Under the pieces are notes generated by a model that worked only from the letters and a program-made list of their open reading frames with translations, was not told the origin of the DNA and made no database searches. A stretch of 63,111 nucleotides of DNA, filler included, from Octopus bimaculoides (lineage: Eukaryota), in NCBI RefSeq assembly GCF_001194135.2. It is 7 parts of 5 records of this genome, joined end to end, with 100 filler letters (N's around TTAATTAATTAA, not from the genome) between each part and the next. Parts side by side here need not be neighbours in the genome. Positions count along the whole stretch, not along the records: positions 1 to 17,723 come from NC_068988.1; 6 more parts are not named here. One strand, given 5' to 3'. Positions 2,086 to 17,167 of the stretch are shown one piece after another (position 1 is the stretch's first letter; every line of letters begins with the position of its first letter). Both the position numbers and the translations under genes were made by a program.

Positions 2086-2257
2086 CTGTATTATGCTGGA
2101 GTCTAATTTTGTAAATTTCATACATTCTGAACTTGATGATAACCACAACAAACTGACATGTTTTCAAACATAATGTATCTAGGACTATATTATCCAATGT
2201 ATCTTTTCTTCTTTTTAAGAAAGTATATGACTGTAGATCATCATCTTCATTTTTATG

Positions 2258-2508
2258 TATTAATGACAAAGGTATTATTAATACTGAGAGTTAATAATTA
2301 TCCCCACTTAAACATGGATGTTCTATTAGAACAGACAATACTGCAGTCGTCACCATGAGAGAAACTCTCATATCGGCTTCAGCAAAAGGCAAATATGAGA
2401 CTTTCTCTCATGGTAACTACTGCAGTATAGACTGTTCTAATAGAACATCCACATTTAAGAGGAGATAAACATTATTTCTTGGTATTAATAATGCCTTTGT
2501 CATTAATA
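2258..2508. mobile_element. Foldback/MITE-like long inverted repeat (~116-bp arms, 19-nt spacer)
   Basis: Arm 2258-2373 is the reverse complement of 2393-2508 at high identity, e.g. GGATGTTCTATTAGAACAG / CTGTTCTAATAGAACATCC. Confidence 0.85.
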
Positions 2509-3070
2509 TATCTTTTTAAACGCTATTTATGGGGACAAAGAAACAAAAACTAAGATGTTTACAGCTGGAATATTTTGATAAAAGGTCTGTTCATTCATGC
2601 CTGAGGACTAAACCACAACAACTTCCCCCTCCCCGACTTACATACCCTACTACTACCTCTTAGATATTTCAATAACGAGAATGGGGGTGGGTATGATTTC
2701 ACATCTTACAATACATTCCAGTACAAAAACAATATAAATAACACAAGACATGACACAATAGCATTGCAGTTCCCTTGATATCCTAAAACAATTTGCAGAA
2801 ACTCATCACATACTTCATCTAACTAACTTACAATAACTTCCTCCCCAGACATCAGTTTCTCTTCTCCTTCACACACACATCCAAGCTAAAAGTAACCACA
2901 TGGCACAAACAATACCTCCACGACTCTACTTCAAACATCTGCNNNNNNNNNNNNNNNNNNNNNNNNNNNNNNNNNNNNNNNNNNNNNNNNNNNNNNNNNN
3001 NNNNNNNNNNNNNNNNNNNNNNNNNNNNNNNNNNNNNNNNNNNNNNNNNNNNNNNNNNNNNNNNNNNNNN

Positions 3071-3301
3071 CCACCACCAGCACCAGCACTTCTACCATCA
3101 CCGCTACTGCCACCACCACCACTACCATCATCGTCATCACCACTGCAACCACCATCATCATTATCACCATCAAGACCACCACCACCACCACCACAACCAC
3201 CACCACCATCATCATCATCACCACCACCATCATTGTTATCACCACCACCACCATCACAGCCACCATCATCACCACCATGACCACTACGACCAGGACCACC
3301 A

Positions 3302-3332
<31 letters not shown>

Positions 3333-3580
3333 AATCATATCATCATCATTATCCTCATACTCTCTCCCATCATCATCATCCTCATATCATCATCACCACC
3401 ACCACCACTGCCGTCACCGTCACCACCGCCACCACCACCAATGTCACTGCTGCCACCACCGTCATTGCCGCTGCCCGCACCACTGCCACCACTGCCAATA
3501 CCATTGCTGCTGCTGCCAACGACACTGCCACTGCCACCAGCACTGCTACCACCACCACCACCACCACCATCATCATCATA
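3071..3580. repeat. Compound (CAC)n/(CAT)n trinucleotide repeat
   Basis: Read directly; explains the poly-P/T/H/V ORFs at 2900-3673. Confidence 0.95.
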
Positions 3581-4209: not shown

Positions 4210-4490
4210 AGAAAGAGACTGGAATGAATACACACATGCACACACACATACAGAGAAATATATATATANNNNNNNNNNNNNNNNNNNNNNNNNNNNNNNN
4301 NNNNNNNNNNNNNNNNNNNNNNNNNNNNNNNNNNNNNNNNNNNNNNNNNNNNNNNNNNNNNNNNNNNNNNNATACATATATGTATACATATATGTATACA
4401 TATATATATACATATATATTTATATATACATACATATATATATGTATATATACATATATATATACATATATATATATACATACATACATA

Positions 4491-4526
<36 letters not shown>

Positions 4527-4676
4527 AACATATATATATACATATATATAGGTATAATTTATATGTATGCATTATATATACATATTATATATGTATTATA
4601 TGTACATACTAAATATACATACATACATATATATATATTTATATATATATATACATATATATTTATATATATATAA

Positions 4677-4743
<67 letters not shown>

Positions 4744-4760
4744 CACAACAGATACATCAC
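4210..4760. repeat. Compound (TA)n/(CA)n microsatellite spanning a gap
   Basis: Read directly. Confidence 0.95.
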
Positions 4761-6182
4761 ACATGCATATGCACACAAACATATGTTTGTGTATGACGAT
4801 ATAAATGGGTGTGCACATTCATCTATATATATACATAAACTCACCGGTGGATACGCATGCACACACTGACACGCACACACATAAATGCACACGCACAAAC
4901 ACACAACCACATCCTATTTATACTTAGCAAGAGATACAGTGACAATGGGTAAAAAAATAAAACATATTAATCTCATACGTACACCCCACTTACACACGTA
5001 TACCGAAGCACATAAACACACACAAGCATCCAAACACACAGTCATTTCCTTATTCTTCCCATACAAAGGTAGAACACAAGAAAGAAGACAAAATAAGACA
5101 TTAAGCAGATCAATAAACATTTTTTCTAAAGTGAATTCAATGATATTACAATAACAACGTCGCAGTTTACCTAAGGTTTATGAAAATAAGATTATTAACA
5201 AATACAGCATAAGAAATGTACGAAACAAATAGAAAATGATACAAAAACTATCCCCTTTATGTCATGAAATAAAAACAAACTATTCTTTCCAACCCTCCCC
5301 ACTTAAGAAATTCTTTGTATTTTCATTTGGTGTCAATAATGTCTGAAGGTGTAACTGTAGTTAAAAAGTTTGCTTTATAACTATTTGGTTCCATGTTTGA
5401 TTCCTCTGTGCTGCACCTTGGGCCAGTTTTTTTACTATGATGTCCTGAGGAAGGCTGATATTGTATGAGTGTGGTATGATAGATAATAACTGTGTAGAGG
5501 GCTGTTGTCGAGTCTCTTTCTCTTTCAGAAAGTTTGCACTTGCCCCCGTAGTAGATAGTTTCCAGTGTGGTTCACACAACACCTTTCTAACAATGCTGGT
5601 TTTTGCGTACATTCCTGTACACAATGTTGGTTTGTTTACATTCCTGTTTGGCCAGAGAGGCTGATAGGATAAGCACCCGACTTACAAAATAAGTATTGGG
5701 GTCCATTTATTTGATTGAACCCTTTGAGATCGTGCTCCAGTATAGTTGCCGTCCGTCCAATGACTGGTAAAAGATGCACACACATGCACACACACACACA
5801 CACACACACACACAAGCAATACTTTCAAAAGCTTTTCAAACATTCGTTACATTGTTCATTAAGACTGCCATCTCTGTCTGAATGTTTTATGTGTGCATGA
5901 GTGTGTGCATATATGAACATGGGTGTGTGCATGTATGTATATGTATGAGTGTGTGTGTGTGTATGTGTTGTCTTGTTTGTCCGTACTGGTGTCTCCCTTC
6001 ATAACTTAGCCAGTCAACAAATCAATGAAATAAGTACCAAACTGAAATATAAACTGGGGTCGATATGATTAGTGAAACAACCTTGAAGACTCTGCCCTAG
6101 CATGGCTACACTCTAACAACTTTAAACTCTAAAATAAGTGTTTATCAGCAGCACCCAATAACTGCCCCACAAAAAAAAAAAA

Positions 6183-6487
6183 ACTGGCACTTAGTTGGTT
6201 ACAATGATGAGCGTTCCAGTTAATACGATCAACCGAACAACCTGCTCATGTGGCTGAATATTCCACAGACATGGATACCCTTGATGTAGTTCTCAAGTAG
6301 ATTCAGCATGACACAGAATGTGACAAGGCTACTCCTTTGAATTATAAGTACAACTCATTTTTGCTAATTGAGTGGACTGGAGCAACTTGAAATAAATCAT
6401 CTAACTCAAGGGTAGAACACATTGCTGGGTATTGAACTCAGTACCTTACAATTATGAGCTGAATACTCTAACCACTAAACTACATGG
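6183..6487 (-). mobile_element. tRNA-derived SINE (SINE-E)
   Basis: Minus strand CCATGTAGTTTAGTGGTTAGAGTATTCAGCTC (A-box) ... GAGTTCAATACC (B-box); TTGCTCCAGTCCACTCA segment shared with 54681-54965. Confidence 0.75.
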
Positions 6488-6602
6488 CTTACAATACAGT
6501 TCTGTATTTAAGAGATGAGGAATTATGTACATTATGTACATTATTTACATTATTTACATTATTTACGTTTGACATATATTTGTCCTCATCTTGTTTGTTG
6601 TT

Positions 6603-6648
6603 AACAGAACGTTTCGGCTGATATACCTTCCAGCCTTCATCAGGGGTC
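6603..6648 (-). ncRNA. Minimal type I hammerhead ribozyme motif (stem I mutated)
   Basis: Minus: GACCC CTGATGA A GGCTGG AAGGTATA TCAGCC GAAA CG TT CTGTT; core intact, stem I disrupted. Confidence 0.6.
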
Positions 6649-6697
6649 TTGGGGAAATTTTGAACCTGGGTTCTCATTCCTAAGGTATTTTTCGATG

Positions 6698-6734
<37 letters not shown>

Positions 6735-6852
6735 GGTCACTGAATATGCCCATAAGCAATTATGGAGTGAATTTTAGGGCTTATGGTGTAGTGGTTGAGA
6801 ATGTGGGCTACTAATCCCAAGATTCCGAGTTCAATTCCAGGCAGTGACCTGA

Positions 6853-6904
<52 letters not shown>

Positions 6905-6962
6905 CAACAACAACATTGAAAAATATCTTAGGGATGAGAACCCAGGTTTGAAATTTCTCCAA

Positions 6963-7008
6963 GACACCTGATGAAGGCTGGAGGGTGTATCAGCCGAAAC
7001 GTTGTGTT
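6963..7008 (+). ncRNA. Minimal type I hammerhead ribozyme (PLE-type, no stem III)
   Basis: GACAC CTGATGA A GGCTGG AGGGTGTA TCAGCC GAAA CG TT GTGTT: 5-bp stem I, 6-bp stem II, CG palindrome replacing stem III, predicted cleavage after 7003. Confidence 0.8.
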
Positions 7009-7611
7009 AACAACAAACAAGATGAGGACAAATATCCGTGAAATGTAAATAATGTAAATAATGTATATAGCTTATGTAGAAAGACACATTAATAGAATAC
7101 TGGACTGTCAACCAAATGGTCAGTAGTTAGGGTTCTCTTATTGACAATGTGCTGTACCACACTCTGTTTGTGACCAACTCTCTCGAATGATAGAGTCCGT
7201 CTAGCTTGAAGCTGGTTGTTGTTGTTGTTGCTGGTGGTGGTAGCAGTAGTGGTGGTGTTATTTAGCCTTTGGTCTACACTGAGCAAATGAACCTATGAAC
7301 TATGATCTAAGACGTTTTCATATTTTTCAAACTTAATGTAGATTGAACTACCTTATCTAATGTCTTCTATTTTTATGATTGTAAGATGTTATTTTTGAAA
7401 GAGCTGGCCACTACTTTATGCAGGTCAAACAACCAAATAACCAGTATATACTTGTGTGTGCATATATATATATATATATATCTTTATTAATATCTAGTGG
7501 AAGCAACAGAGTCTGGGAGTTTTGTGAGTAGGTAATGCTAAATATTAATAAAAATATACATATACTCATATTTTGAGTTGTATTTTTCTTGTTTGCATCA
7601 CCATACCTATA

Positions 7612-7694
<83 letters not shown>

Positions 7695-8489
7695 ATATAT
7701 ATACAGACATACACACACACAGACACACATACATATGTATATATGCATGTATATATGCATATGTCTATGTATATATAAATATGCACATACATATATGTAG
7801 TTACATAGTGTATCTAACATATATCATATACTATATAGTATGTGTTTTATACTTATTTTATACATTATGTGTAACTTTTTAACTACAGTGAGGAGAAAAG
7901 TGATTATCCTCAGGCTAAAACAAATTCACAAAATTCACAGTGGTATGTCTTTCCTTCTGTAAGAATATAATTGTGGTGTATTAAGTGACTGTAATAAGAA
8001 AATGATTTTCCACAGATTTCATATTTGAATGGCTGTTTACCAGCATGAATTTATTTGTAATCTTGTAATTTTGTACTCAGAGACATTGTTTTCCCACAAA
8101 TATCACAATGGTGTTTTTTTTTCGACCCTCTCTTTTTTTTACCCTCCTGAAAGAATGTGTTTATGACTTCATAATTTATAATTAAATGTGAACTCTTTGC
8201 CACCAACTTCAGGGTGGTATTGTTTTTCATCGGTGTCCAGGGCTTGGAGCTAAGATATTCAGTTCCCCTAAGCTAGTTCTGCTACGTTTGTTCCCTTCTC
8301 TTTGCCCTATAATGTACCCCACTTTTTCCAGCCCTAGACTGTGCACCCCTTTTTTCCTGCCTAATAATATGTTACCCTTCTCCTTGCCTATAATGTGTGT
8401 CACTCCTCCCAGTCCTACAATCTATCTCCTCCTCTCCTAACTTTATATTTGTGTGCCTCCTTAAACAATTTTTTTCTTCTAAGTAAAAA

Positions 8490-8893
8490 GTGCAGGCATG
8501 GCTGTGTGGTAAGAAGCTTGCTTCCCAACCACATGTTTCTGGGTTCAGTCCCACTGCATGGCACCTTAAGAAAGTGTCTTCTACTATATAGCCTTGGGTT
8601 AATCAAAGCCTTGTGGGTGGATCTGGTAGACATAAGCTGAAAGAGACCCGTCTGTATATGTGTATATGTGTGTGTGTGTGTCTTAGTGTCTATGTTTGTT
8701 CCCCACCACTGCTTGACAACCTGTGCTGGCATGCTTACATCTCTATAACTGAGTGATTTGGTTAAAAAGACTGATAGAGTAAGCACCAAGCCAATAAAAA
8801 AGTACTGGATCAATACATTTGGCTAAAATTTCAAGGTAGTACACTAGCATGGCTGCAGTCAAATGGCTGAAAAAACGTAAAAGATAAAAGATA
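8490..8893 (+). mobile_element. tRNA-derived SINE with internal microsatellite (SINE-B), CpG-decayed
   Basis: GGCATGGCTGTGTGGTAAG (A-box), GGGTTCAGTCCC (B-box), internal (TA)/(TG)n, AAAAGAT tail; more than 10 homologs in window. Confidence 0.85.
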
Positions 8894-9379: not shown

Positions 9380-10170
9380 ATCTTATAGATGTTTATTGTT
9401 CATTTCACAGAGCTTCTCTCTGTGAACTATTTTATGAGTTGAAAAGCTATTGCTCGTAGATAACTCTTTGCCACTTATTTCATATTTATCTGATATTTTC
9501 CCCTATATAAATATGTTTGTGAGTTTTAGCATGAGATCTCCCAGCAAGTTCTTGGTACAAATTTCATAGCAAACAGTAGTTATGGTTATTTCACCAATCA
9601 GAATGTGGTTATGTTAACCTAATAATATACTGAGCTAGAATAACTTTCCACAAACTTCAACTTTGCAAACTTTTTCTTTATGACTAATTTTATGACTGGA
9701 CAAGCTACAACTTGAAGATAACACTTTACCATGCATTTAACATTGGTATGGCATTTATCCTGTGTAAATATATTTGTGAACTTCAATTGATTATCCCAAA
9801 TAAACCTTTCCACAGAAATTTCACTCTTGTATGATTTTTCTCTCATGTGAACTCGTTTGTGATGTTACTTTACAGTTACAAGGAAACTTTTCCTCTACAA
9901 GTTTTACTACTGAATAGTTTTACTTTGTGAATTCATTTATGACCAGATAAGGTATGGTTAGAAGGAAATGTATTTCCAAAAATTTTGCATGGAATGCTTT
10001 TTCTCCTATGTGTGTGTATTTAAGATTTGTTAAAGCACTCTTTTGAGAAGACAATCTCTCATAAGCTTCATGTTGGTGTGGCTTTTCTTCAGTATGAGCA
10101 TGTGTATAAGATGTAAGGTCACTCATAGAAAAAGAAAATATTTTTCCCAGCATCAAACATCTCAGCAATG
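9380..10170 (-). pseudogene. Degenerate C2H2 zinc-finger array (~9 fingers; frameshifts and stops)
   Basis: Pieced minus-strand translations: GKIFS..HAHTEEKPH, THIGEKAF, PCKIFGNTF..GHK*IH, HKRVHMREKSY, HKYIYTG*MPYQC*MHGK..SHKISH, EVCGKLF, THKHIYIGE, SGKEL..THKIVH; H-x3-H plus TGEKPY-like linkers (Kruppel-type C2H2). Confidence 0.85.
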
Positions 10171-10479
10171 TATATTGTTGGTCTACTTTTAACTAATCTT
10201 CCAAAGCATAAACATCAATAGGATCAGTACTATTTCTGGTTTCCATAACATTTCAGCAGATACAAATTTAATCTGCCCTTGGATAAGACTCTGGTCGAGA
10301 ACAGATAAGTTTTTATCACTGGTGGAACTGAACCCAGTGCATTAAATCTATGTGATATTCTACCAGTTCTGTGTTGTTTTACTGCTAAAAGCAGTGAAAA
10401 TCTTTAGATTTGAAAATGCTCAAGCTTCTGATGTTTAACATTAAAAACTAAAATTCAGAAAGGTGCTATTTAATATAAT

Positions 10480-10870
10480 AAAAATGGTTTCATATTTTGG
10501 CACAAGGCCAGCAAGTTTGGGAGTGAGGGCAAAACAATTACATCAACCCCAGAGCTCAGCTTATTTTATCAGCCCTGAAAGGATACAAGGCAGAGTAAAC
10601 CTTATTTCTTTATTGCCTACAAGGGGCTAAACATAGAGGGGACAAACAAGAGCAGACAAAGGGATTAAGTCGATTACATCGACTCCAGTGCATAACTAGT
10701 ACTTAATTTATCGACCCCAAAAGGATGAAAGGCAAAGTCAACCTCGGCGGAACTTGAACTCAGAACGTAACAGCAGACGAAATACTGTTAAGCATTTCGC
10801 CCGGCATGCTAACGTTTCTGCCAGCTCGCCGCCTTGGTGGAATTTGAACCCAGAACGTAAAGATGGACTC
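10480..10870 (-). mobile_element. Older SINE-A copy interrupted by a younger SINE-A
   Basis: 10480-10601 (GGCACAAGGCCAGC..GAAAGGATACAAGGCAGAGTAAACC) continues at 10836 (GGTGGAATTTGAACCCAG), matching the consensus across the insert. Confidence 0.7.
10602..10835 (-). mobile_element. Young tRNA-derived SINE-A (tail type 1)
   Basis: Minus GGCGGCGAGCTGGCAGAAACGTTAGC head, GAGTTCAAGTTCC B-box, GCCTTTCATCCTTTTGGGGTCGATAAATTAAGTAC core; near-identical to 60719-60950. Confidence 0.9.
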
Positions 10871-11222
10871 AGCCCTCCTTTTATCCCATAGTTTCACACC
10901 ACACATTGCTCTAACCATTGCTCTCTTGGTCCTTCTCAAAATGCCATTTCACTTTCCCTCAGACACCAGGTCTCTCTCACTCCCATACAACATTTCAGAT
11001 CTCATGCAACTCTGATAAACCCTTCCTTTCATCTCCAAGGAGAACCTTTCCCATATAATAATACTAAGTGTTTGCTTGACTTTTGAAGAATGGTGAATCA
11101 TAGTTTACCTTTGTTCTCTTTAGAGAAGGGATTTCATTGTCATTTGGAAGAAATTCTTCCTCTTCACCTATTTTCATTTCATTTTATATAATTTCCCTTC
11201 CTTTTTTCCTTTTGTATTTTAT

Positions 11223-11442
11223 AAGGCATTAAGCTGGTAGAATTGTTAGTACACCTGGCAAAATGTGTAGCGACATTTTGTCCATCAGCCTGTTCCAAGT
11301 TCAAATCCTGCCAAGGTTGACTTTGTTTTTCATCCTTTTGGGGGTCAATAAATTAAGTACCAGTGAGACACTAGAGTCAATGTAATCAATTAGTTCCCAT
11401 CCACAAAATTCCAGGCCTTTTGCCTATAGTAGAAAGGATTAT
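11223..11442 (+). mobile_element. SINE-A (tail type 2), CpG-decayed
   Basis: Same head and core; tail CAGGCCTTTTGCCTATAGTAGAAAGGATTAT. Confidence 0.8.
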
Positions 11443-12600: not shown

Positions 12601-13006
12601 GCCAGGCATGGCTGTGTGGTAAGAAGCTTGATTCTCAACCACAGAGTTCTGGGTTCAGTCCTACTGCCTGACACCTTGGGAAAATGTCTTTTCCTATAGC
12701 CTCAGGCTGACCAAAGCCATGTGAGTGGATTTGATAGGTGGAAACTGAAAGAAGTCCATCGTATATATGTATATATAAGTATGTATATATTTGTGTGTCT
12801 GTGTTTGTCACTCCCACCATCGCTTGACAACTAATGTTGGTGTGTTTATGTCCCCAGAACTTAGTGGTTCAGAGGCAAAAGAGACCAATAGAATAAGTAC
12901 TAGGCTTCCAAAGAATAAATCCTGGGGTCGATTTGTTTGACTAAATGCGGTGCTCCAGCATGGTCGCATTCAAATGCCTGAAACAAATAAAAGAATAAAA
13001 GAATAA
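12601..13006 (+). mobile_element. SINE-B, full length
   Basis: Head, internal TA/TG tract, 3' half and AAAAGAAT tail. Confidence 0.9.
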
Positions 13007-13125: not shown

Positions 13126-13235
13126 CTGCCATCACTCGAAGCTTTGATTGAAGAGACACAATCAAGTTGAAACACTAGTGTCTCAAATTTCCCCTTTGTC
13201 TCTAAACGACATGTGTTGTGAACACACATCATCTG

Positions 13236-13985
13236 AAAGGGGGAATTAATTTATAAAGGAAAAATACAACAGTAATTTGCATATTCAAGTTCAAATCTGT
13301 CAGAATATATTGAGAATGAATATACATGTCATTATTTTGATTCTCAGTTTTACAAGCACACAATTATTTAATGTCAGCTTGGTAAACATTAGCACATGTC
13401 AGTAAATAATTTGTTATGGAATTCTATGAATGTGAGTGGCCATGTTTGTTTAGATCAAATATCCAGGGTTAGCTTTAACTAAGGAGAAATAACCATGTTG
13501 AAACAGTGGTGTCCCAAAACTCCTCTGCATCACTGTATTGCATGTTGTCAAGGTACATAGTTTCAGGGGAAGAATTGCTCTCTAAAGTCGAAATACAACA
13601 GTGATTAGCATATTCATATTCAAATCTGCCAGAATATATTAAGAATGAATGTGGAAGTCATTATTTGCATTTTCACTGTTTTACATGCACACAATAATTT
13701 AATATCAACTTTGCACAGACATTAGCAAGTGTCAGCAAATAATTTGTTTATGGAATTCTATGAACACGAGTGTCCATTTTTTATTAAGATCAGAGATCCA
13801 GGAGTAGCTTTAACTGAGGATAAATAATCATGCTGAAACAGTGGTGTCTCAAAACTCCTCTGCATCACTGTATTGCATGTTGTCAAGGCACATAATTTCG
13901 AGGTAAGAATTCCTCTCAGAAGTTGAAATGCAATTGTGATTAGCATATTCATGTTCAAATCTGCCAGAACATGTTAAAAATGAAT
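13236..13985 (+). repeat. Tandem duplication, ~330-bp unit x ~2.2
   Basis: Anchor AAATACAAC/AAATGCAAT at 13262, 13591 and 13926 (periods 329 and 335). Confidence 0.9.
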
Positions 13986-14892
13986 ATGCATGCGATTGTT
14001 AATCCATTTATATTTTTCTTAAATATTATTTTAATATACGTCAATACCTATAACAATGTGTCACGTAATATCTATATATCAATGCGCTACCTTGTACTGA
14101 TGTGTGACTTAATACATTCTAATGGTTGGGGTATATGTATATACTTCTATTTATATCTATCAGAGTACTTAATATACCATACTTACGTAATTTCATTACC
14201 TTTCATTCTGCATCTGTGATGCTTATCTTTATGTATTACTAAGTTCCAATGAGACGTTTATGAATGTGGTTTTGCTGTGACAATAGTTAATATGATTTCT
14301 TTGCATCTTTACTATAATTGGATAACCCGCATTATATCCCTTCTTGGAGCAGATGCATAACATTTTTTTTTTAACTGTATTAGACTTCATGTGTTATTCA
14401 TTTCTGCCTGAACATCTATATGCTATTTTCTTAGTATATATGCATGTATGTATGTATATTTACATGTATAAATGTACTTATCTATGTGAACATGTATATA
14501 TGTTTTTCTTACCATCAATCTAATACACACACACACATTCATACATATATATAAACATATACACATAGAGATGCAGACGCACATCCCCCCCACACACACA
14601 TACATACACACACATTCTTATATGCAGGAGTGTATGTGTTGCATTTTAAGTGTTGAAGTAGCAAAATCATTAGAGTTTTAGACAAAATGTTTTGCAGCAT
14701 TCTAGGTTTTTTCAATTCAGTGTTCAAATACCTACTGGGACATATCTACTTTTCATGTTTTCAGATTTGCCAAAAATTTACCAATCTGTGGCAGTGGAAT
14801 GAATGAATTGTTAGAACATTAGGTAAACCAATTTACCATTCTTGTTCTGCCTGCTTATTATCTAAGTTCAAATCCCATATGCTATGTATATT

Positions 14893-15097
14893 CTTTTCTA
14901 TTCTAAGGCCTGAAATTTTGGGGTGGGGGCTAGTTGATTAGATCGACCCAGTACACAACTGGTACTTAATTTATCGACCCCGAAAGGATGAAAGGCAAAG
15001 TCGACCTTAGCAGAATTTGAACTCAGAACATAAAGACAGACGAAATACTGTGAGGCATTTCGTCCAGCGTGCTACCGTTTCTCCCATCTCACTGCCT
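14893..15097 (-). mobile_element. SINE-A (tail type 2) with 10-bp TSD
   Basis: TSD TATGTATATT at 14883-14892 and 15098-15107. Confidence 0.9.
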
Positions 15098-15354
15098 TAT
15101 GTATATTACATAAGTTGATTCAGTAACAAGTATGATCATTTCTTAATGAGCTTCAAAGAAAAGTTGATTTATAAACCCAGATGATGATTTGGAAGTTTTG
15201 CCACATCTGTTACATAAATGTCTCCTTTCAGTTAAATGCAATACAGAATCATGACATTTAGTATGGCATAGCTACATGCGTCCTTTCAGATAAACAATGA
15301 AAATACAACATTCATTATATGATTAGTACATATGTTCTTTCTCACAAATATCTT

Positions 15355-15738
15355 ATATCTTTTACTTGTTTAGTCATTAGGCTGTGGCTATGCTGGGGCA
15401 CTGCTTTCAAGAAATTTTAGTCAAATGAATTGACCCCATTAATTACTTTTGTTAAGCCTGTTACTTATTCTAGTGATCACTTTTGCCAAACTGCTAGGTT
15501 ATTGGGATGTAAACACACCAACACTGGTTGTCAAGTGGTGGTGGGAGACAAGCACAGATACAAAGACACATAGTCACACACACACACACTTCTTTCAGTT
15601 TCTGTCTACCAAATTTTACACACAAGACTTTGGTCGGTTCAAGGTTGTAGTAGAAAACACATTACACAAAGTGCCACACAGTGAGACTGAACCTAAAACT
15701 ATGAGATTGGGAAGCAAGTTTCTTACCACACAGCCATA
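15355..15738 (-). mobile_element. SINE-B, CpG-decayed
   Basis: Colinear with 61862-62313, most CpG converted to TG/CA. Confidence 0.85.
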
Positions 15739-15774
15739 ACTTCACCTAAAGTAACTTCACCTAAAGCATATATT

Positions 15775-15966
15775 CTTTTCTACTCTAGGCACAAAGCCCG
15801 AAGTTTTGGGGGGAGGGGGTCAGTCAATCAGATCGACCCAGTATTCAACTGGTACTTAATTTATTGACCCCAAAAATTGAAAGGCAAAGTCAACCTTGGC
15901 AGAATTTGAACTCAGAATGTAAAGACAGATGAAATACTGCTAACATTTCTGCCACCTCGCCGCCTT
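15775..15966 (-). mobile_element. SINE-A (tail type 2) with ~16-bp TSD
   Basis: ACCTAAAGCATATATT (15759-15774) / ACCTAACGTATATATT (15967-15982). Confidence 0.85.
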
Positions 15967-16564
15967 ACCTAACGTATATATTAACTTGTTTTGTTTCATG
16001 TAATGTTGAACTGCTAACAAGACCACCCTTAAAAATAGAATTTCTTACAAATTGGACATTTTAAGACATTCTTAATACCTCTGAAGCTTCCTTTCTTTGC
16101 TTCTCGTATCAATTTTGTGTGTTCACTGCAACTCTCTTCAAAATGCATGAGTGCACTGAATATAATTTTGTCAATGATGTCCTATCAATTGCGTTTTCTC
16201 CAGCTTTCCACATGAATATAAACATTGTAAAATTTGTATGTGCATATGAACAACAAACACATGTAAACACGTATAGCCACCCATGCATAAAAACATGTAT
16301 ACATAGGTGCATATAGCCACCCATGCATAAAAAAACATGTATACATGGGTGCACAGATAAGCTTATACATATGCAAGCACAAGCGTTTTTGTGCATGGAG
16401 CATGGACGAATCTGAGCACAGGACCAATTTGTTCATCCATCTATCCATACATATATATAGAAATACATATAAACTTATTTATCTATCTATCTATCCATTT
16501 ATCTACCTATCTATCTATTTATCTACCTACCTACCTACCTATCTGTCTGTCTGTCTGTTTGTTT

Positions 16565-16619
<55 letters not shown>

Positions 16620-16938
16620 NNNNNNNNNNNNNNNNNNNNNNNNNNNNNNNNNNNNNNNNNNNNNNNNNNNNNNNNNNNNNNNNNNNNNNNNNNNNNNNNN
16701 NNNNNNNNNNNNNNNNNNNNNNNNNNNNNNNNNNNNNNNNNNNNNNNNNNNNNNNNNNNNNNNNNNNNNNNNNNNNNNNNNNNNNNNNNNNNNNNNNNNN
16801 NNNNNNNNNNNNNNNNNNNNNNNNNNNNNNNNNNNNNNNNNNNNNNNNNNNNNNNNNNNNNNNNNNNNNNNNNNNNNNNNNNNNNNNNNNNNNNNNNNNN
16901 NNNNNNNNNNNNNNNNNNNNNNNNNNNNNNNNNNNNNN

Positions 16939-16992
<54 letters not shown>

Positions 16993-17029
16993 CATATATG
17001 TTTACAATGATCCCAGTGTTCAAATGATA

Positions 17030-17167
17030 CTCATTTTATCAACCCCCGACAGGATGAACGGAAAAAAACCAACCTTGCTGGAATTTGAAAGCAGAGCGTA
17101 AACACAGATAAAATGCCACTAACCATTTTGCCTGGCATTCTCAAGATTCTGCCAGCTCACTGCCTTA
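17030..17167 (-). mobile_element. SINE-A 5' part
   Basis: ACCCCCGACAGGATGAACGG..GGAATTTGAA..GATTCTGCCAGCTCACTGCC. Confidence 0.75.

What the first reader, a model, noticed from the sequence alone, without database searches (positions are those of the whole stretch)
6493..7063. A tRNA-headed SINE-like element that carries a hammerhead ribozyme
Seen: Pol III A/B boxes (TGGCGTAGTGG, GAGTTCGATTCC; best preserved in copy 2), an (AAT)n tract, then GACAC-CTGATGA-A-GGCTGG..TCAGCC-GAAA-CG-TT-GTGTT and an AATGTAAAT tail, in three insertions (6493, 34182, 45568). Established: hammerheads with stem III replaced by a short palindrome are typical of Penelope-like elements and are reported to cleave as dimers. 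Inference: a non-autonomous tRNA/PLE chimera whose Pol III transcript is processed by its own ribozyme and copied by PLE machinery. I do not recall this combination being described; novelty is unverified.
Basis: partly seen in the sequence, partly recalled or inferred. Interest (0 to 1): 0.9.

Follow-up and report, generated by a model that had tools for sequence, protein, structure and literature searches.

The report
Inverted pair of hammerhead-carrying SINE-like retroposons
The interval holds two old, head-to-head copies of a short non-coding mobile element that ends in a Penelope-type minimal hammerhead ribozyme; one copy also has a tRNA-like front end. This is a modest new variation on known ribozyme-bearing retroposons, not a new kind of system.

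Summary
A complete type I hammerhead lies at 6963-7008 (+), predicted cut after 7003, against 0.007 expected by chance per window. Pol III A and B boxes at 6784 and 6828 have the canonical 44-nt spacing. (AAT)16 and an AATGTAAAT tail are also there.

The interval is not one element. It is an inverted repeat (6542-6733 / 6878-7069, 91% identical): a full right copy on + and a left copy on - that keeps only 8 nt of the head and has a broken helix I. Tails point outward and 5' ends inward.

The ribozyme matches the published Penelope-like element (PLE) minimal hammerhead: bulged A before a 6-bp helix II, 5-bp helix I, palindromic ACGU helix III. An inverted 5'-truncated partner is the published PLE insertion signature.

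PLE-mediated copying is therefore supported. Self-processing of a Pol III transcript is not: the cut would remove the 3' module, and such monomers are nearly inactive. Schistosome Sm-alpha elements (Pol III promoter plus hammerhead) and PLE-dependent retrozymes are precedents.

No further copies or partner PLE could be retrieved, so whether the head belongs to the family is unproven.

The parts
6777..6849 (+). tRNA-related head of the right copy. A box TGGTGTAGTGG 6784-6794 and B box AGTTCAATTCC 6828-6838, 44-nt start-to-start spacing. The last 8 nt, CAGTGACC (6842-6849), fall where a tRNA's 3' acceptor strand and discriminator would be.
   Evidence: Direct reading. A+B box scan: 3 hits in the piece against 0.05 expected. 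No standard tRNA call. About 65% similar to the head of the neighbouring SINE at 6484-6405 (I13).
6854..6914 (+). Internal microsatellite spacer of the right copy, (TAA)16 followed by (AAC)5.
   Evidence: TRF. Also present in the left copy as (ATT)11 at 6701-6733, so it belongs to the repeated unit and is not the target site.
6915..6962 (+). Body segment between the microsatellite and the ribozyme.
   Evidence: Aligned to the left copy; counted over 6917-6963 there are 6 differences in 47 nt.
6963..7008 (+). Intact type I minimal hammerhead. Helix I is GACAC/GUGUU (5 bp). Core is CUGAUGA plus a bulged A. Helix II is GGCUGG/UCAGCC (6 bp) with an 8-nt loop. Then GAAA, helix III reduced to the palindrome ACGU, and U17. 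Predicted cut between 7003 and 7004.
   Evidence: Descriptor scan gives 1 hit against 0.007 expected. The hammerhead-compatible fold scores -13.0 against an MFE of -13.6 kcal/mol. The architecture matches the PLE min-hammerhead description (PMC4209133).
7009..7041 (+). AC-rich block immediately 3' of the cleavage site (AACAACAAACAAGATGAGGACAAATAT...). It is the best-conserved stretch between the two copies: no difference from 7005 to 7035.
   Evidence: Module-wise differences. By analogy, the anole PLE starts reverse transcription in an AC-rich stem-loop about 85-92 nt 3' of its hammerhead cut (PMC11167929). The analogy is an inference.
7042..7069 (+). 3'-terminal tandem 9-mers (AATGTAAAT), about 3 units. 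Homology to the left copy ends here.
   Evidence: (I16, I17).
6522..6566 (-). 3'-terminal tandem 9-mers of the left (minus-strand) copy, 5 units.
   Evidence: TRF: period 9, 5.0 copies, 97% matches. The repeat finder D2.
6603..6648 (-). Hammerhead of the left copy. Core, bulged A, helix II and ACGU are intact. Helix I is broken by two uncompensated changes (GACCC / CUGUU), which leaves 3 bp.
   Evidence: Alignment, difference list. It fails the descriptor that requires helix I of at least 4 bp.
6649..6742 (-). Body, (AAT)11(AAC)2 spacer and the last 8 nt of the head (GGTCACTG on +, 6735-6742) of the left copy. Homology with the right copy stops here, so this copy lacks almost the whole head.
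   Evidence: (I4). A further shared 8-mer, GCTTATGG (6750-6757 in reverse complement versus 6779-6786), has p about 0.025. It may mean an internal deletion of the head rather than a 5' truncation.
6743..6776 (.). Junction between the two inward-facing 5' ends, with no homology between the copies.
   Evidence: Alignment.

Best explanation
The locus is one old insertion complex of a short non-autonomous retroposon, about 290 bp. It consists of a complete copy on the + strand (6777-7069) and, abutting its 5' end, an inverted copy on the - strand (6522-6742) that has lost nearly all of its head.

The unit has three modules:
(i) a tRNA-derived head with internal Pol III A and B boxes;
(ii) an (AAT)n(AAC)n spacer plus a roughly 48-nt body;
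(iii) a 3' module taken from a Penelope-like element (PLE). This holds a minimal type I hammerhead, an AC-rich block and terminal 9-mer repeats.

Proposed mechanism:
- Pol III transcribes the unit from the head. This is inferred. The sense strand of both copies has no T4 terminator.
- A PLE reverse transcriptase/GIY-YIG endonuclease supplied in trans binds the 3' module. It nicks both strands of an AT-rich target and primes cDNA on both. The result is two copies with tails attached to the flanks and 5' ends meeting in the middle. This is inferred from the architecture and from published PLE biochemistry.
- The hammerhead is there because it is part of the PLE 3'/pLTR module. As a solitary monomer with a 2-bp helix III it is probably almost inactive, and the uncleaved RNA is the template. 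Cleavage would need a second hammerhead in trans or in tandem. It would separate the head and body from the RT-initiation region.

Both copies are now decaying neutrally. They differ at 9% of positions, and the left ribozyme's helix I is destroyed.
For: - Inverted repeat, 192 nt at 91%, with 3' tandem 9-mers at both outer ends and the 5' ends inward.
- The microsatellite and CAGTGACC are shared by both copies on their inner sides, so they are part of the unit and not the target.
- The hammerhead is complete, with a chance expectation of 0.007, and its fold is within 0.6 kcal/mol of the MFE.
- Its features (unpaired nucleotide 5' of a long helix II, 4-5 bp helix I, small palindromic helix III) are those reported for PLE hammerheads. 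'Dual min-HHRs about 100-700 bp apart on opposite strands' were also reported (PMC4209133).
- An inverted 5'-truncated copy adjacent to the 5' end is typical of PLE insertions (PMC8557442).
- A purified PLE protein cleaves and extends both target strands, prefers AT-rich/ATT sites, and starts reverse transcription in an AC-rich stem-loop downstream of the hammerhead (PMC11167929).
- The A and B boxes have exact tRNA spacing. CAGTGACC sits exactly in the acceptor-3' register, 3 nt after the B box.
- Neither copy has TTTT on its sense strand.
- The head resembles that of a resident SINE, as expected for module shuffling.
Against: - Only one locus is available, and the two copies may stem from a single event. 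The family-level structure (head plus hammerhead module) is therefore not demonstrated here.
- The head scores below every tRNA detector.
- Only 8 nt of the head are shared by both copies, plus a second 8-mer with p about 0.025.
- Absence of T4 is weak evidence: 17% of random 293-nt windows of the piece also lack it.
- No target-site duplication was found.
- No RT or GIY-YIG coding remnant is in the window.
- No partner PLE or further copy could be retrieved from any accessible collection.
- With two sequences there is no covariation. The core has no changes, but that is not significant: I estimate about 2.6 expected changes at the overall divergence, P about 0.07, from the difference list.
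Confidence: 0.55

Rival explanations
1. The two arms are simply 5'-truncated 3' ends (pLTR fragments) of an autonomous PLE, inserted as the usual inverted pair. The tRNA-like piece is not part of the element. It would be a fragment of an unrelated resident SINE or tRNA-derived RNA, captured as filler at the 5' junction (template switch or repair) or already present there.
For: - Most genomic min-hammerheads are solitary and were interpreted as truncated PLEs. Opposite-strand pairs 100-700 bp apart were noted (PMC4209133).
- tRNA-like heads are frequent in this window, 3 in 17.7 kb.
- Head B fails the tRNA models.
- The left copy has no recognisable head beyond 8 nt.
Against: - Homology between the copies runs through the microsatellite into CAGTGACC. 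That 8-mer lies in the exact acceptor-strand register of the head, 3 nt after the B box, with canonical 44-nt box spacing.
- A second head 8-mer is shared (p about 0.025).
- No coding remnant lies upstream of the body.
- A roughly 150-nt unit with an internal (AAT)n is an odd 3' end for an autonomous PLE.
Confidence: 0.25
2. A single insertion was later duplicated in inverted orientation at the DNA level, by fold-back or template switching during replication or repair. The palindrome would then say nothing about the integration machinery.
For: - A short inverted 8-mer (CCATAAGC 6750-6757 / GCTTATGG 6779-6786) sits near the centre and could have seeded a fold-back.
- The 9% divergence shows the structure is old.
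Against: - Homology ends at both outer sides exactly at the terminal 9-mer arrays, the natural 3' end of the unit, rather than at arbitrary points.
- The arms are not contiguous with the central short repeat: 8 nt on one side against 55 nt on the other.
- The arrangement is the one documented for PLE insertions.
Confidence: 0.12
3. A MITE or foldback-type DNA transposon with terminal inverted repeats of about 190-250 bp that happen to contain a hammerhead-like sequence.
For: Long inverted arms flank a short unique centre. The read-through RNA or DNA would form a very stable hairpin, -321.6 kcal/mol for 6522-7069.
Against: - No target-site duplication at either candidate boundary.
- The termini are tandem 9-mers of unequal copy number (5 against about 3), which is typical of retroposon 3' ends.
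- A complete hammerhead is expected 0.007 times per window by chance.
Confidence: 0.05
4. The hammerhead resemblance is fortuitous and the repeat is an ordinary SINE or LINE tail without any ribozyme relationship.
For: No Rfam hammerhead model matches. There is no covariation evidence, and activity is untested.
Against: All invariant core positions, both helices and the PLE-specific peculiarities are present. Chance expectation is 0.007 per window. The core and helix II are unchanged in the second copy despite 9% overall divergence.
Confidence: 0.03

Closest known systems
Minimal type I hammerheads of Penelope-like elements (Cervera & de la Pena 2014, PMC4209133; Lunse et al. 2017, cited in PMC6765202)
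   Same: The core is the same. Both have an unpaired nucleotide 5' of a long helix II (6 bp here), a short helix I (5 bp) and helix III reduced to a small palindrome (ACGU). Both occur as solitary motifs or as pairs on opposite strands a few hundred bp apart.
   Different: Here the motif is not in the pLTR of an RT/EN-encoding element. It sits in a roughly 290-bp non-coding unit that appears to begin with a tRNA-like Pol III head.
PLE insertion architecture (Craig et al. 2021, PMC8557442; Frangieh et al. 2024, PMC11167929)
   Same: An inverted 5'-truncated copy abuts the 5' end of the main copy. The flanks are AT-rich. The 3' end lies some tens of nt downstream of the hammerhead, after an AC-rich segment.
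   Different: There is no direct partial tandem (pLTR), no ORF and no demonstrable 30-40-bp 'tail' extension. The partner PLE is unknown.
Schistosome Sm-alpha / Sj-alpha SINE-like elements (Ferbeyre et al. 1998; Laha et al. 2000; summarised in PMC6765202)
   Same: Both are short non-coding retroposon-like repeats that combine a Pol III promoter with a hammerhead ribozyme.
   Different: Per the review, Sm-alpha units are often in tandem, cleave in cis or trans, and carry the promoter on the 3' side of the cleavage site. Here the promoter-like head is 5' of the ribozyme, the ribozyme is of the PLE minimal type, and the copies are inverted rather than tandem. Sequence relatedness could not be tested.
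Metazoan non-LTR retrozymes (Cervera & de la Pena 2020, PMC7229834; Li et al. 2026 preprint, 10.64898/2026.07.22.740005)
   Same: Both are non-autonomous hammerhead-bearing elements thought to depend on PLE machinery, and solitary 'monomer' copies are known.
   Different: Retrozymes are defined by tandem direct repeats that yield 170-400-nt circular RNAs. In the papers searched here no tRNA or Pol III head is described for them.
tRNA-derived SINEs (SINE2)
   Same: A tRNA-related head with A and B boxes, a body, and a 3' end of short tandem repeats. Heads of similar type are abundant in the same window.
   Different: Classical SINEs borrow their 3' end from a LINE and insert as single copies with TSDs. 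Here the 3' module is PLE-like and the insertion is an inverted pair without a detectable TSD.

Membership tests
Hammerhead ribozyme, type I, PLE minimal variant | Invariant core C3-U4-G5-A6-N7-G8-A9 ... G12-A13-A14, A15.1-U16.1, H17 | tested here: met
   CUGAUGA 6968-6974, GAAA 6996-6999, U16.1 at 7002 and U17 at 7003. The same core is intact in the left copy.
Hammerhead ribozyme, type I, PLE minimal variant | Helices I and II base-paired around the core | tested here: met
   Right copy: helix I 5 bp, helix II 6 bp. In the left copy helix I is reduced to 3 bp by two uncompensated changes.
Hammerhead ribozyme, type I, PLE minimal variant | PLE-type peculiarities: unpaired nucleotide 5' of helix II, long helix II, helix I of 4-5 bp, small palindromic helix III | tested here: met
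   Bulged A6975, 6-bp helix II, 5-bp helix I, ACGU palindrome at 6999-7002. Compared with the description in PMC4209133.
Hammerhead ribozyme, type I, PLE minimal variant | Match to a curated Rfam hammerhead covariance model | tested here: not met
   No hammerhead family is listed at E<=10, even when only 62 nt are searched. I expect this because the motif lacks a closed helix III; that reason is my inference.
Hammerhead ribozyme, type I, PLE minimal variant | Self-cleavage (as a dimer) and stem covariation across copies | not testable with these tools
   Only two copies are available, with no compensatory change. Cleavage needs an experiment.
tRNA-derived SINE | tRNA-related head with Pol III A and B boxes at tRNA spacing | tested here: met
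   TGGTGTAGTGG at 6784 and AGTTCAATTCC at 6828, 1 and 2 mismatches to consensus, 44-nt spacing. Three such pairs in the piece against 0.05 expected.
tRNA-derived SINE | Head recognisable as a tRNA by structure-aware models | tested here: not met
   ARAGORN finds 0 genes. Rfam tRNA gives no hit on 6772-6858. The relaxed ARAGORN hit is not above background.
tRNA-derived SINE | Dispersed multi-copy family in which the head and the 3' module are joined in most copies | tested here: inconclusive
   Only the two adjacent copies exist in the piece. Both share the head's last 8 nt. Scans of the viral, metagenome and prokaryote-genome collections gave nothing.
tRNA-derived SINE | Target-site duplication flanking the insertion | tested here: not met
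   No direct repeat of at least 9 nt (1 mismatch allowed) links the flanks; the only matches fall within or beside the 9-mer arrays.
PLE-dependent non-autonomous element | Inverted 5'-truncated copy adjacent to the 5' end, or a pLTR partial tandem | tested here: met
   An inverted partner is present. There is no direct tandem. The feature is described in PMC8557442.
PLE-dependent non-autonomous element | 3' region shared with an autonomous PLE (RT + GIY-YIG) of the same genome | not testable with these tools
No RT or GIY-YIG domain occurs in the window.
Metazoan non-LTR retrozyme | Tandem direct repeats, each with a hammerhead, giving unit-length circular RNA | tested here: not met
   The two hammerheads are on opposite strands and there is no direct repeat of the unit. 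CircRNA formation is not testable.
MITE / foldback DNA transposon | Terminal inverted repeats reaching the element ends, plus a fixed TSD | tested here: not met
   Inverted arms exist, but they end in tandem 9-mers of unequal number and no TSD is found.

The most novel reading that the evidence does not exclude
This is a real, multi-copy family of Pol III-driven, tRNA-headed SINEs whose 3' end is a PLE recognition module including the minimal hammerhead. It would be a SINE whose autonomous partner is a Penelope-like element rather than a LINE, inserting with the PLE double-strand-priming signature. I found no description of such a tRNA-head/PLE-tail SINE in the literature I could search. Repbase and Dfam could not be consulted.
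Probability: 0.35. Interest if true: 0.6.

Novelty: new variant of a known kind. Interest (0 to 1): 0.4.

Why it matters
The mechanism of PLE mobilisation and the role of the PLE hammerhead are still open. Reviews call the role unknown (PMC7761336), and cleavage was dispensable in vitro (PMC11167929).

A natural 290-nt Pol III-transcribed passenger would delimit the minimal RNA a PLE enzyme needs. It carries only the hammerhead, an AC-rich block and a short repeat tail. It would also give a compact reporter for PLE retrotransposition and for testing whether the ribozyme acts in vivo.

It would extend the SINE concept to a third class of autonomous partner. If it turns out to be only a truncated PLE end next to an unrelated SINE fragment, it is routine repeat annotation.

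Tried and rejected
- Exact-pattern scans for the ribozyme, the AC-rich block and the body in viral, metagenome and prokaryote-genome collections returned zero hits.
- Protein-space trick: I searched the spurious sense-strand ORF of the left copy, and an ORF of a neighbouring SINE, against the 5.8-billion-protein collection to find other copies or the organism. There were no hits.
- A full-text search of the paper library for sequence fragments gave no hits.
- Ferbeyre 1998 and Lunse 2017 could not be opened. They are used only through reviews.
- Relaxed ARAGORN as evidence for the head was rejected, because shuffles give 7.2 hits per window.
- Extension of the element to 6495 and 7108 through the shared AATAC.G.ACTGT was rejected (p=0.08).
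- L1-style twin priming was rejected. The two arms duplicate the same 3' region instead of covering adjacent parts of one RNA.
- (AAT)n as the insertion target was rejected. It lies on the inner (5') side of both copies, whereas TPRT joins the 3' tails to the target.
- An assembly palindrome artefact was rejected, because the arms differ at 18 of 192 positions.
- The miRNA-family hits are TG/TA microsatellite artefacts below gathering score.

Full report
**1. What is in the sequence**

The piece is AT-rich (33.6% G+C), rich in microsatellites, broken by three assembly gaps, and without real ORFs. It looks like animal intergenic DNA packed with short repeats.

- TGGTGTAGTGG at 6784-6794 and GAGTTCAATTCC at 6827-6838.
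- (TAA)16 at 6854-6901, then (AAC)5.
- A roughly 48-nt body.
- GACAC-CUGAUGA-A-GGCUGG-(8 nt)-UCAGCC-GAAA-CG-UU|GUGUU at 6963-7008.
- An AC-rich block.
- (AATGTAAAT)n up to 7069.

**2. Is it more than chance?**

I wrote a descriptor for the hammerhead. It required CUGANGA, an optional bulge, helix II of at least 4 bp, GAAA, A15.1/U16.1 with 0-8 nt between them, H17, and helix I of at least 4 bp. It finds exactly one site in the 17.7-kb piece. Dinucleotide shuffles give 0.007 sites per window. The hammerhead-compatible secondary structure is within 0.6 kcal/mol of the MFE.

A+B box pairs at tRNA spacing occur three times in the piece, against 0.05 expected. One of them is the head of this element, with a start-to-start spacing of 44 nt, as in a tRNA.

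The head is nonetheless degenerate. ARAGORN and the Rfam tRNA model do not call it. Relaxed ARAGORN is no better than background.

No Rfam hammerhead model matches. I expect this for hammerheads that lack a closed helix III.

**3.

The interval is an inverted repeat. Arms 6542-6733 and 6878-7069 are 192 nt long and 91% complementary.

The left arm is a second copy on the minus strand. It contains:
- Five terminal 9-mers (6522-6566).
- The AC-rich block.
- A hammerhead (6603-6648) whose core, bulge, helix II and ACGU are intact. Its helix I is broken by two uncompensated substitutions.
- The body.
- (AAT)11(AAC)2.
- GGTCACTG at 6735-6742.

That last 8-mer is the reverse complement of CAGTGACC (6842-6849). 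In the right copy CAGTGACC sits 3 nt after the B box, exactly where a tRNA's 3' acceptor strand and discriminator would be. Beyond it the copies diverge.

A second head 8-mer, GCTTATGG, recurs 7 nt further on in the left copy (p about 0.025). The left copy may therefore carry an internal deletion of the head rather than a clean truncation.

The 3' tails point outward and the 5' ends meet in the middle. The microsatellite and the end of the head are internal to the repeated unit.

Differences between the arms (18 of 192; 13 transitions) are spread roughly evenly. The stretch 7005-7035, just 3' of the cleavage site, has none. There is no covariation, and with only two sequences no significant excess conservation of the core.

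I found no target-site duplication. Homology beyond the 9-mer arrays is not significant. The element therefore spans about 6522-7069, not 6493-7063.

**4. Comparison with the literature**

Cervera & de la Pena (PMC4209133) describe PLE hammerheads as having:
- a longer-than-usual helix II;
- a helix I of 4-5 bp;
- in the Drosophila, rotifer, shrimp and mosquito variants, a small palindromic helix III.

That is the anatomy seen here. They also report pairs of such motifs 100-700 bp apart on opposite strands, and that most genomic motifs are solitary and probably belong to truncated PLEs.

Craig et al. (PMC8557442) state that PLE insertions often have an inverted 5'-truncated copy immediately adjacent to the 5' end.

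Frangieh et al. (PMC11167929) worked with a purified anole PLE protein. It nicks and extends both strands of AT-rich (ATT) targets. It needs only RNA from about the hammerhead cut site to roughly 150 nt downstream. It starts reverse transcription internally in an AC-rich stem-loop, and it does not need hammerhead cleavage.

Priming on both strands predicts exactly the arrangement found here: tails joined to the flanks and 5' ends in the middle. L1-type twin priming does not fit, because the arms duplicate the same region.

**5. Most likely mechanism**

I read the locus as one PLE-type integration of a non-autonomous unit.

- Shown: the anatomy, the inverted pair and the match to the PLE hammerhead type.
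- Inferred: Pol III transcription from the head. No T4 occurs on the sense strand of either copy, but 17% of random windows also lack T4.
- Inferred: recognition of the hammerhead-proximal 3' module by a PLE enzyme in trans.

A cut after 7003 would sever the head and body from the AC-rich block and tail. Monomeric minimal hammerheads showed no detectable activity, and dimers were weak. The hammerhead is better seen as an inherited part of the PLE 3' module, whose in vivo role is still called unknown (PMC7761336).

A read-through transcript of the whole locus would fold into a long hairpin (-321.6 kcal/mol), which would sequester both ribozymes.

**6. Rivals**

- Main rival, 0.25: the arms are ordinary truncated PLE ends, and the tRNA-like piece is unrelated filler or a neighbour. 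tRNA-like heads are common in this window, which makes this plausible. The register of CAGTGACC relative to the B box argues against it.
- 0.12: a DNA-level inverted duplication.
- 0.05: a MITE or foldback DNA transposon.
- 0.03: a chance motif.

**7. Known relatives and novelty**

SINE-like elements with a Pol III promoter and a hammerhead exist in schistosomes (Sm-alpha and Sj-alpha). [quoted passage not shown]

None of the papers I could search describes a tRNA-derived head joined to a PLE-type minimal hammerhead tail. Repbase and Dfam were not available, and the family may already be catalogued.

I rate it a new variant of a known kind, of moderate interest, conditional on the genome-wide check.

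**8. Limits**

No other copy and no partner PLE could be obtained. No RT or GIY-YIG domain is present in the window.

From memory only, the neighbouring repeat families resemble abundant octopus SINEs. Three tRNA-derived SINE families were described in octopus in 1994 (cited in PMC10886601). That paper could not be read, and the organism is unverified.

Noticed in passing
window 6171-6484 (- strand): A different tRNA-headed SINE-like unit abuts the left copy's tail. A box at 6482 and B box at 6438, 44-nt spacing. Rfam tRNA scores 28.3 bits, just under the gathering score of 29. The body is about 250 nt and the unit ends in a T13 run (6183-6171) on its sense strand. Its head is about 65% similar to the head of the finding.
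   Followed up: partly
window 8490-8893 (+), 12603-13002 (+), 15349-15745 (-): Three copies (71-72% identical) of a roughly 400-bp tRNA-headed SINE family with an internal TG/TA microsatellite. From memory it resembles an abundant octopus SINE, which suggests a cephalopod source. This is unverified.
   Followed up: partly
window 10668-10835, 14932-15098, 15769-15939, 11221-11419 (-), 17002-17166: At least five copies (70-85% identical) of another repeat of about 170 bp (…ggatgaaaggcaaagtcaacctcggcggaacttgaactcagaacgta…). It is probably a further SINE family of the same genome.
   Followed up: no
window 2255-2511: A self-complementary stretch (83% over 257 nt) that forms a long hairpin. It is MITE- or foldback-like and explains the sub-threshold MIR6224 hit.
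   Followed up: no
window 13140-13988: A 335-bp unit present in about 2.2-2.5 tandem copies (80-84% identical).
   Followed up: no
window 7913-8272 and 9622-10192 (- strand): Decayed C2H2 zinc-finger-like fragments. Pfam zf-C2H2 scores 16.5 bits, below its cut-off, on 7913-8050; the 9622-10192 fragments were judged by eye. They may be a zinc-finger pseudogene.
   Followed up: partly
window 4372-4911, 5776-5964, 7444-7813, 14432-14609, 16233-17010: All microRNA-family hits (mir-297, mir-3149, mir-466, mir-1277 and others) sit on TG/TA microsatellites and are far below gathering scores. They are composition artefacts, not miRNA genes.
   Followed up: yes
window 2943-3070, 4269-4371, 16620-16938: Three assembly gaps (runs of N), each next to microsatellite or low-complexity sequence. 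A long CCA/CAT/CAC-rich tract lies at 3071-3570.
   Followed up: no
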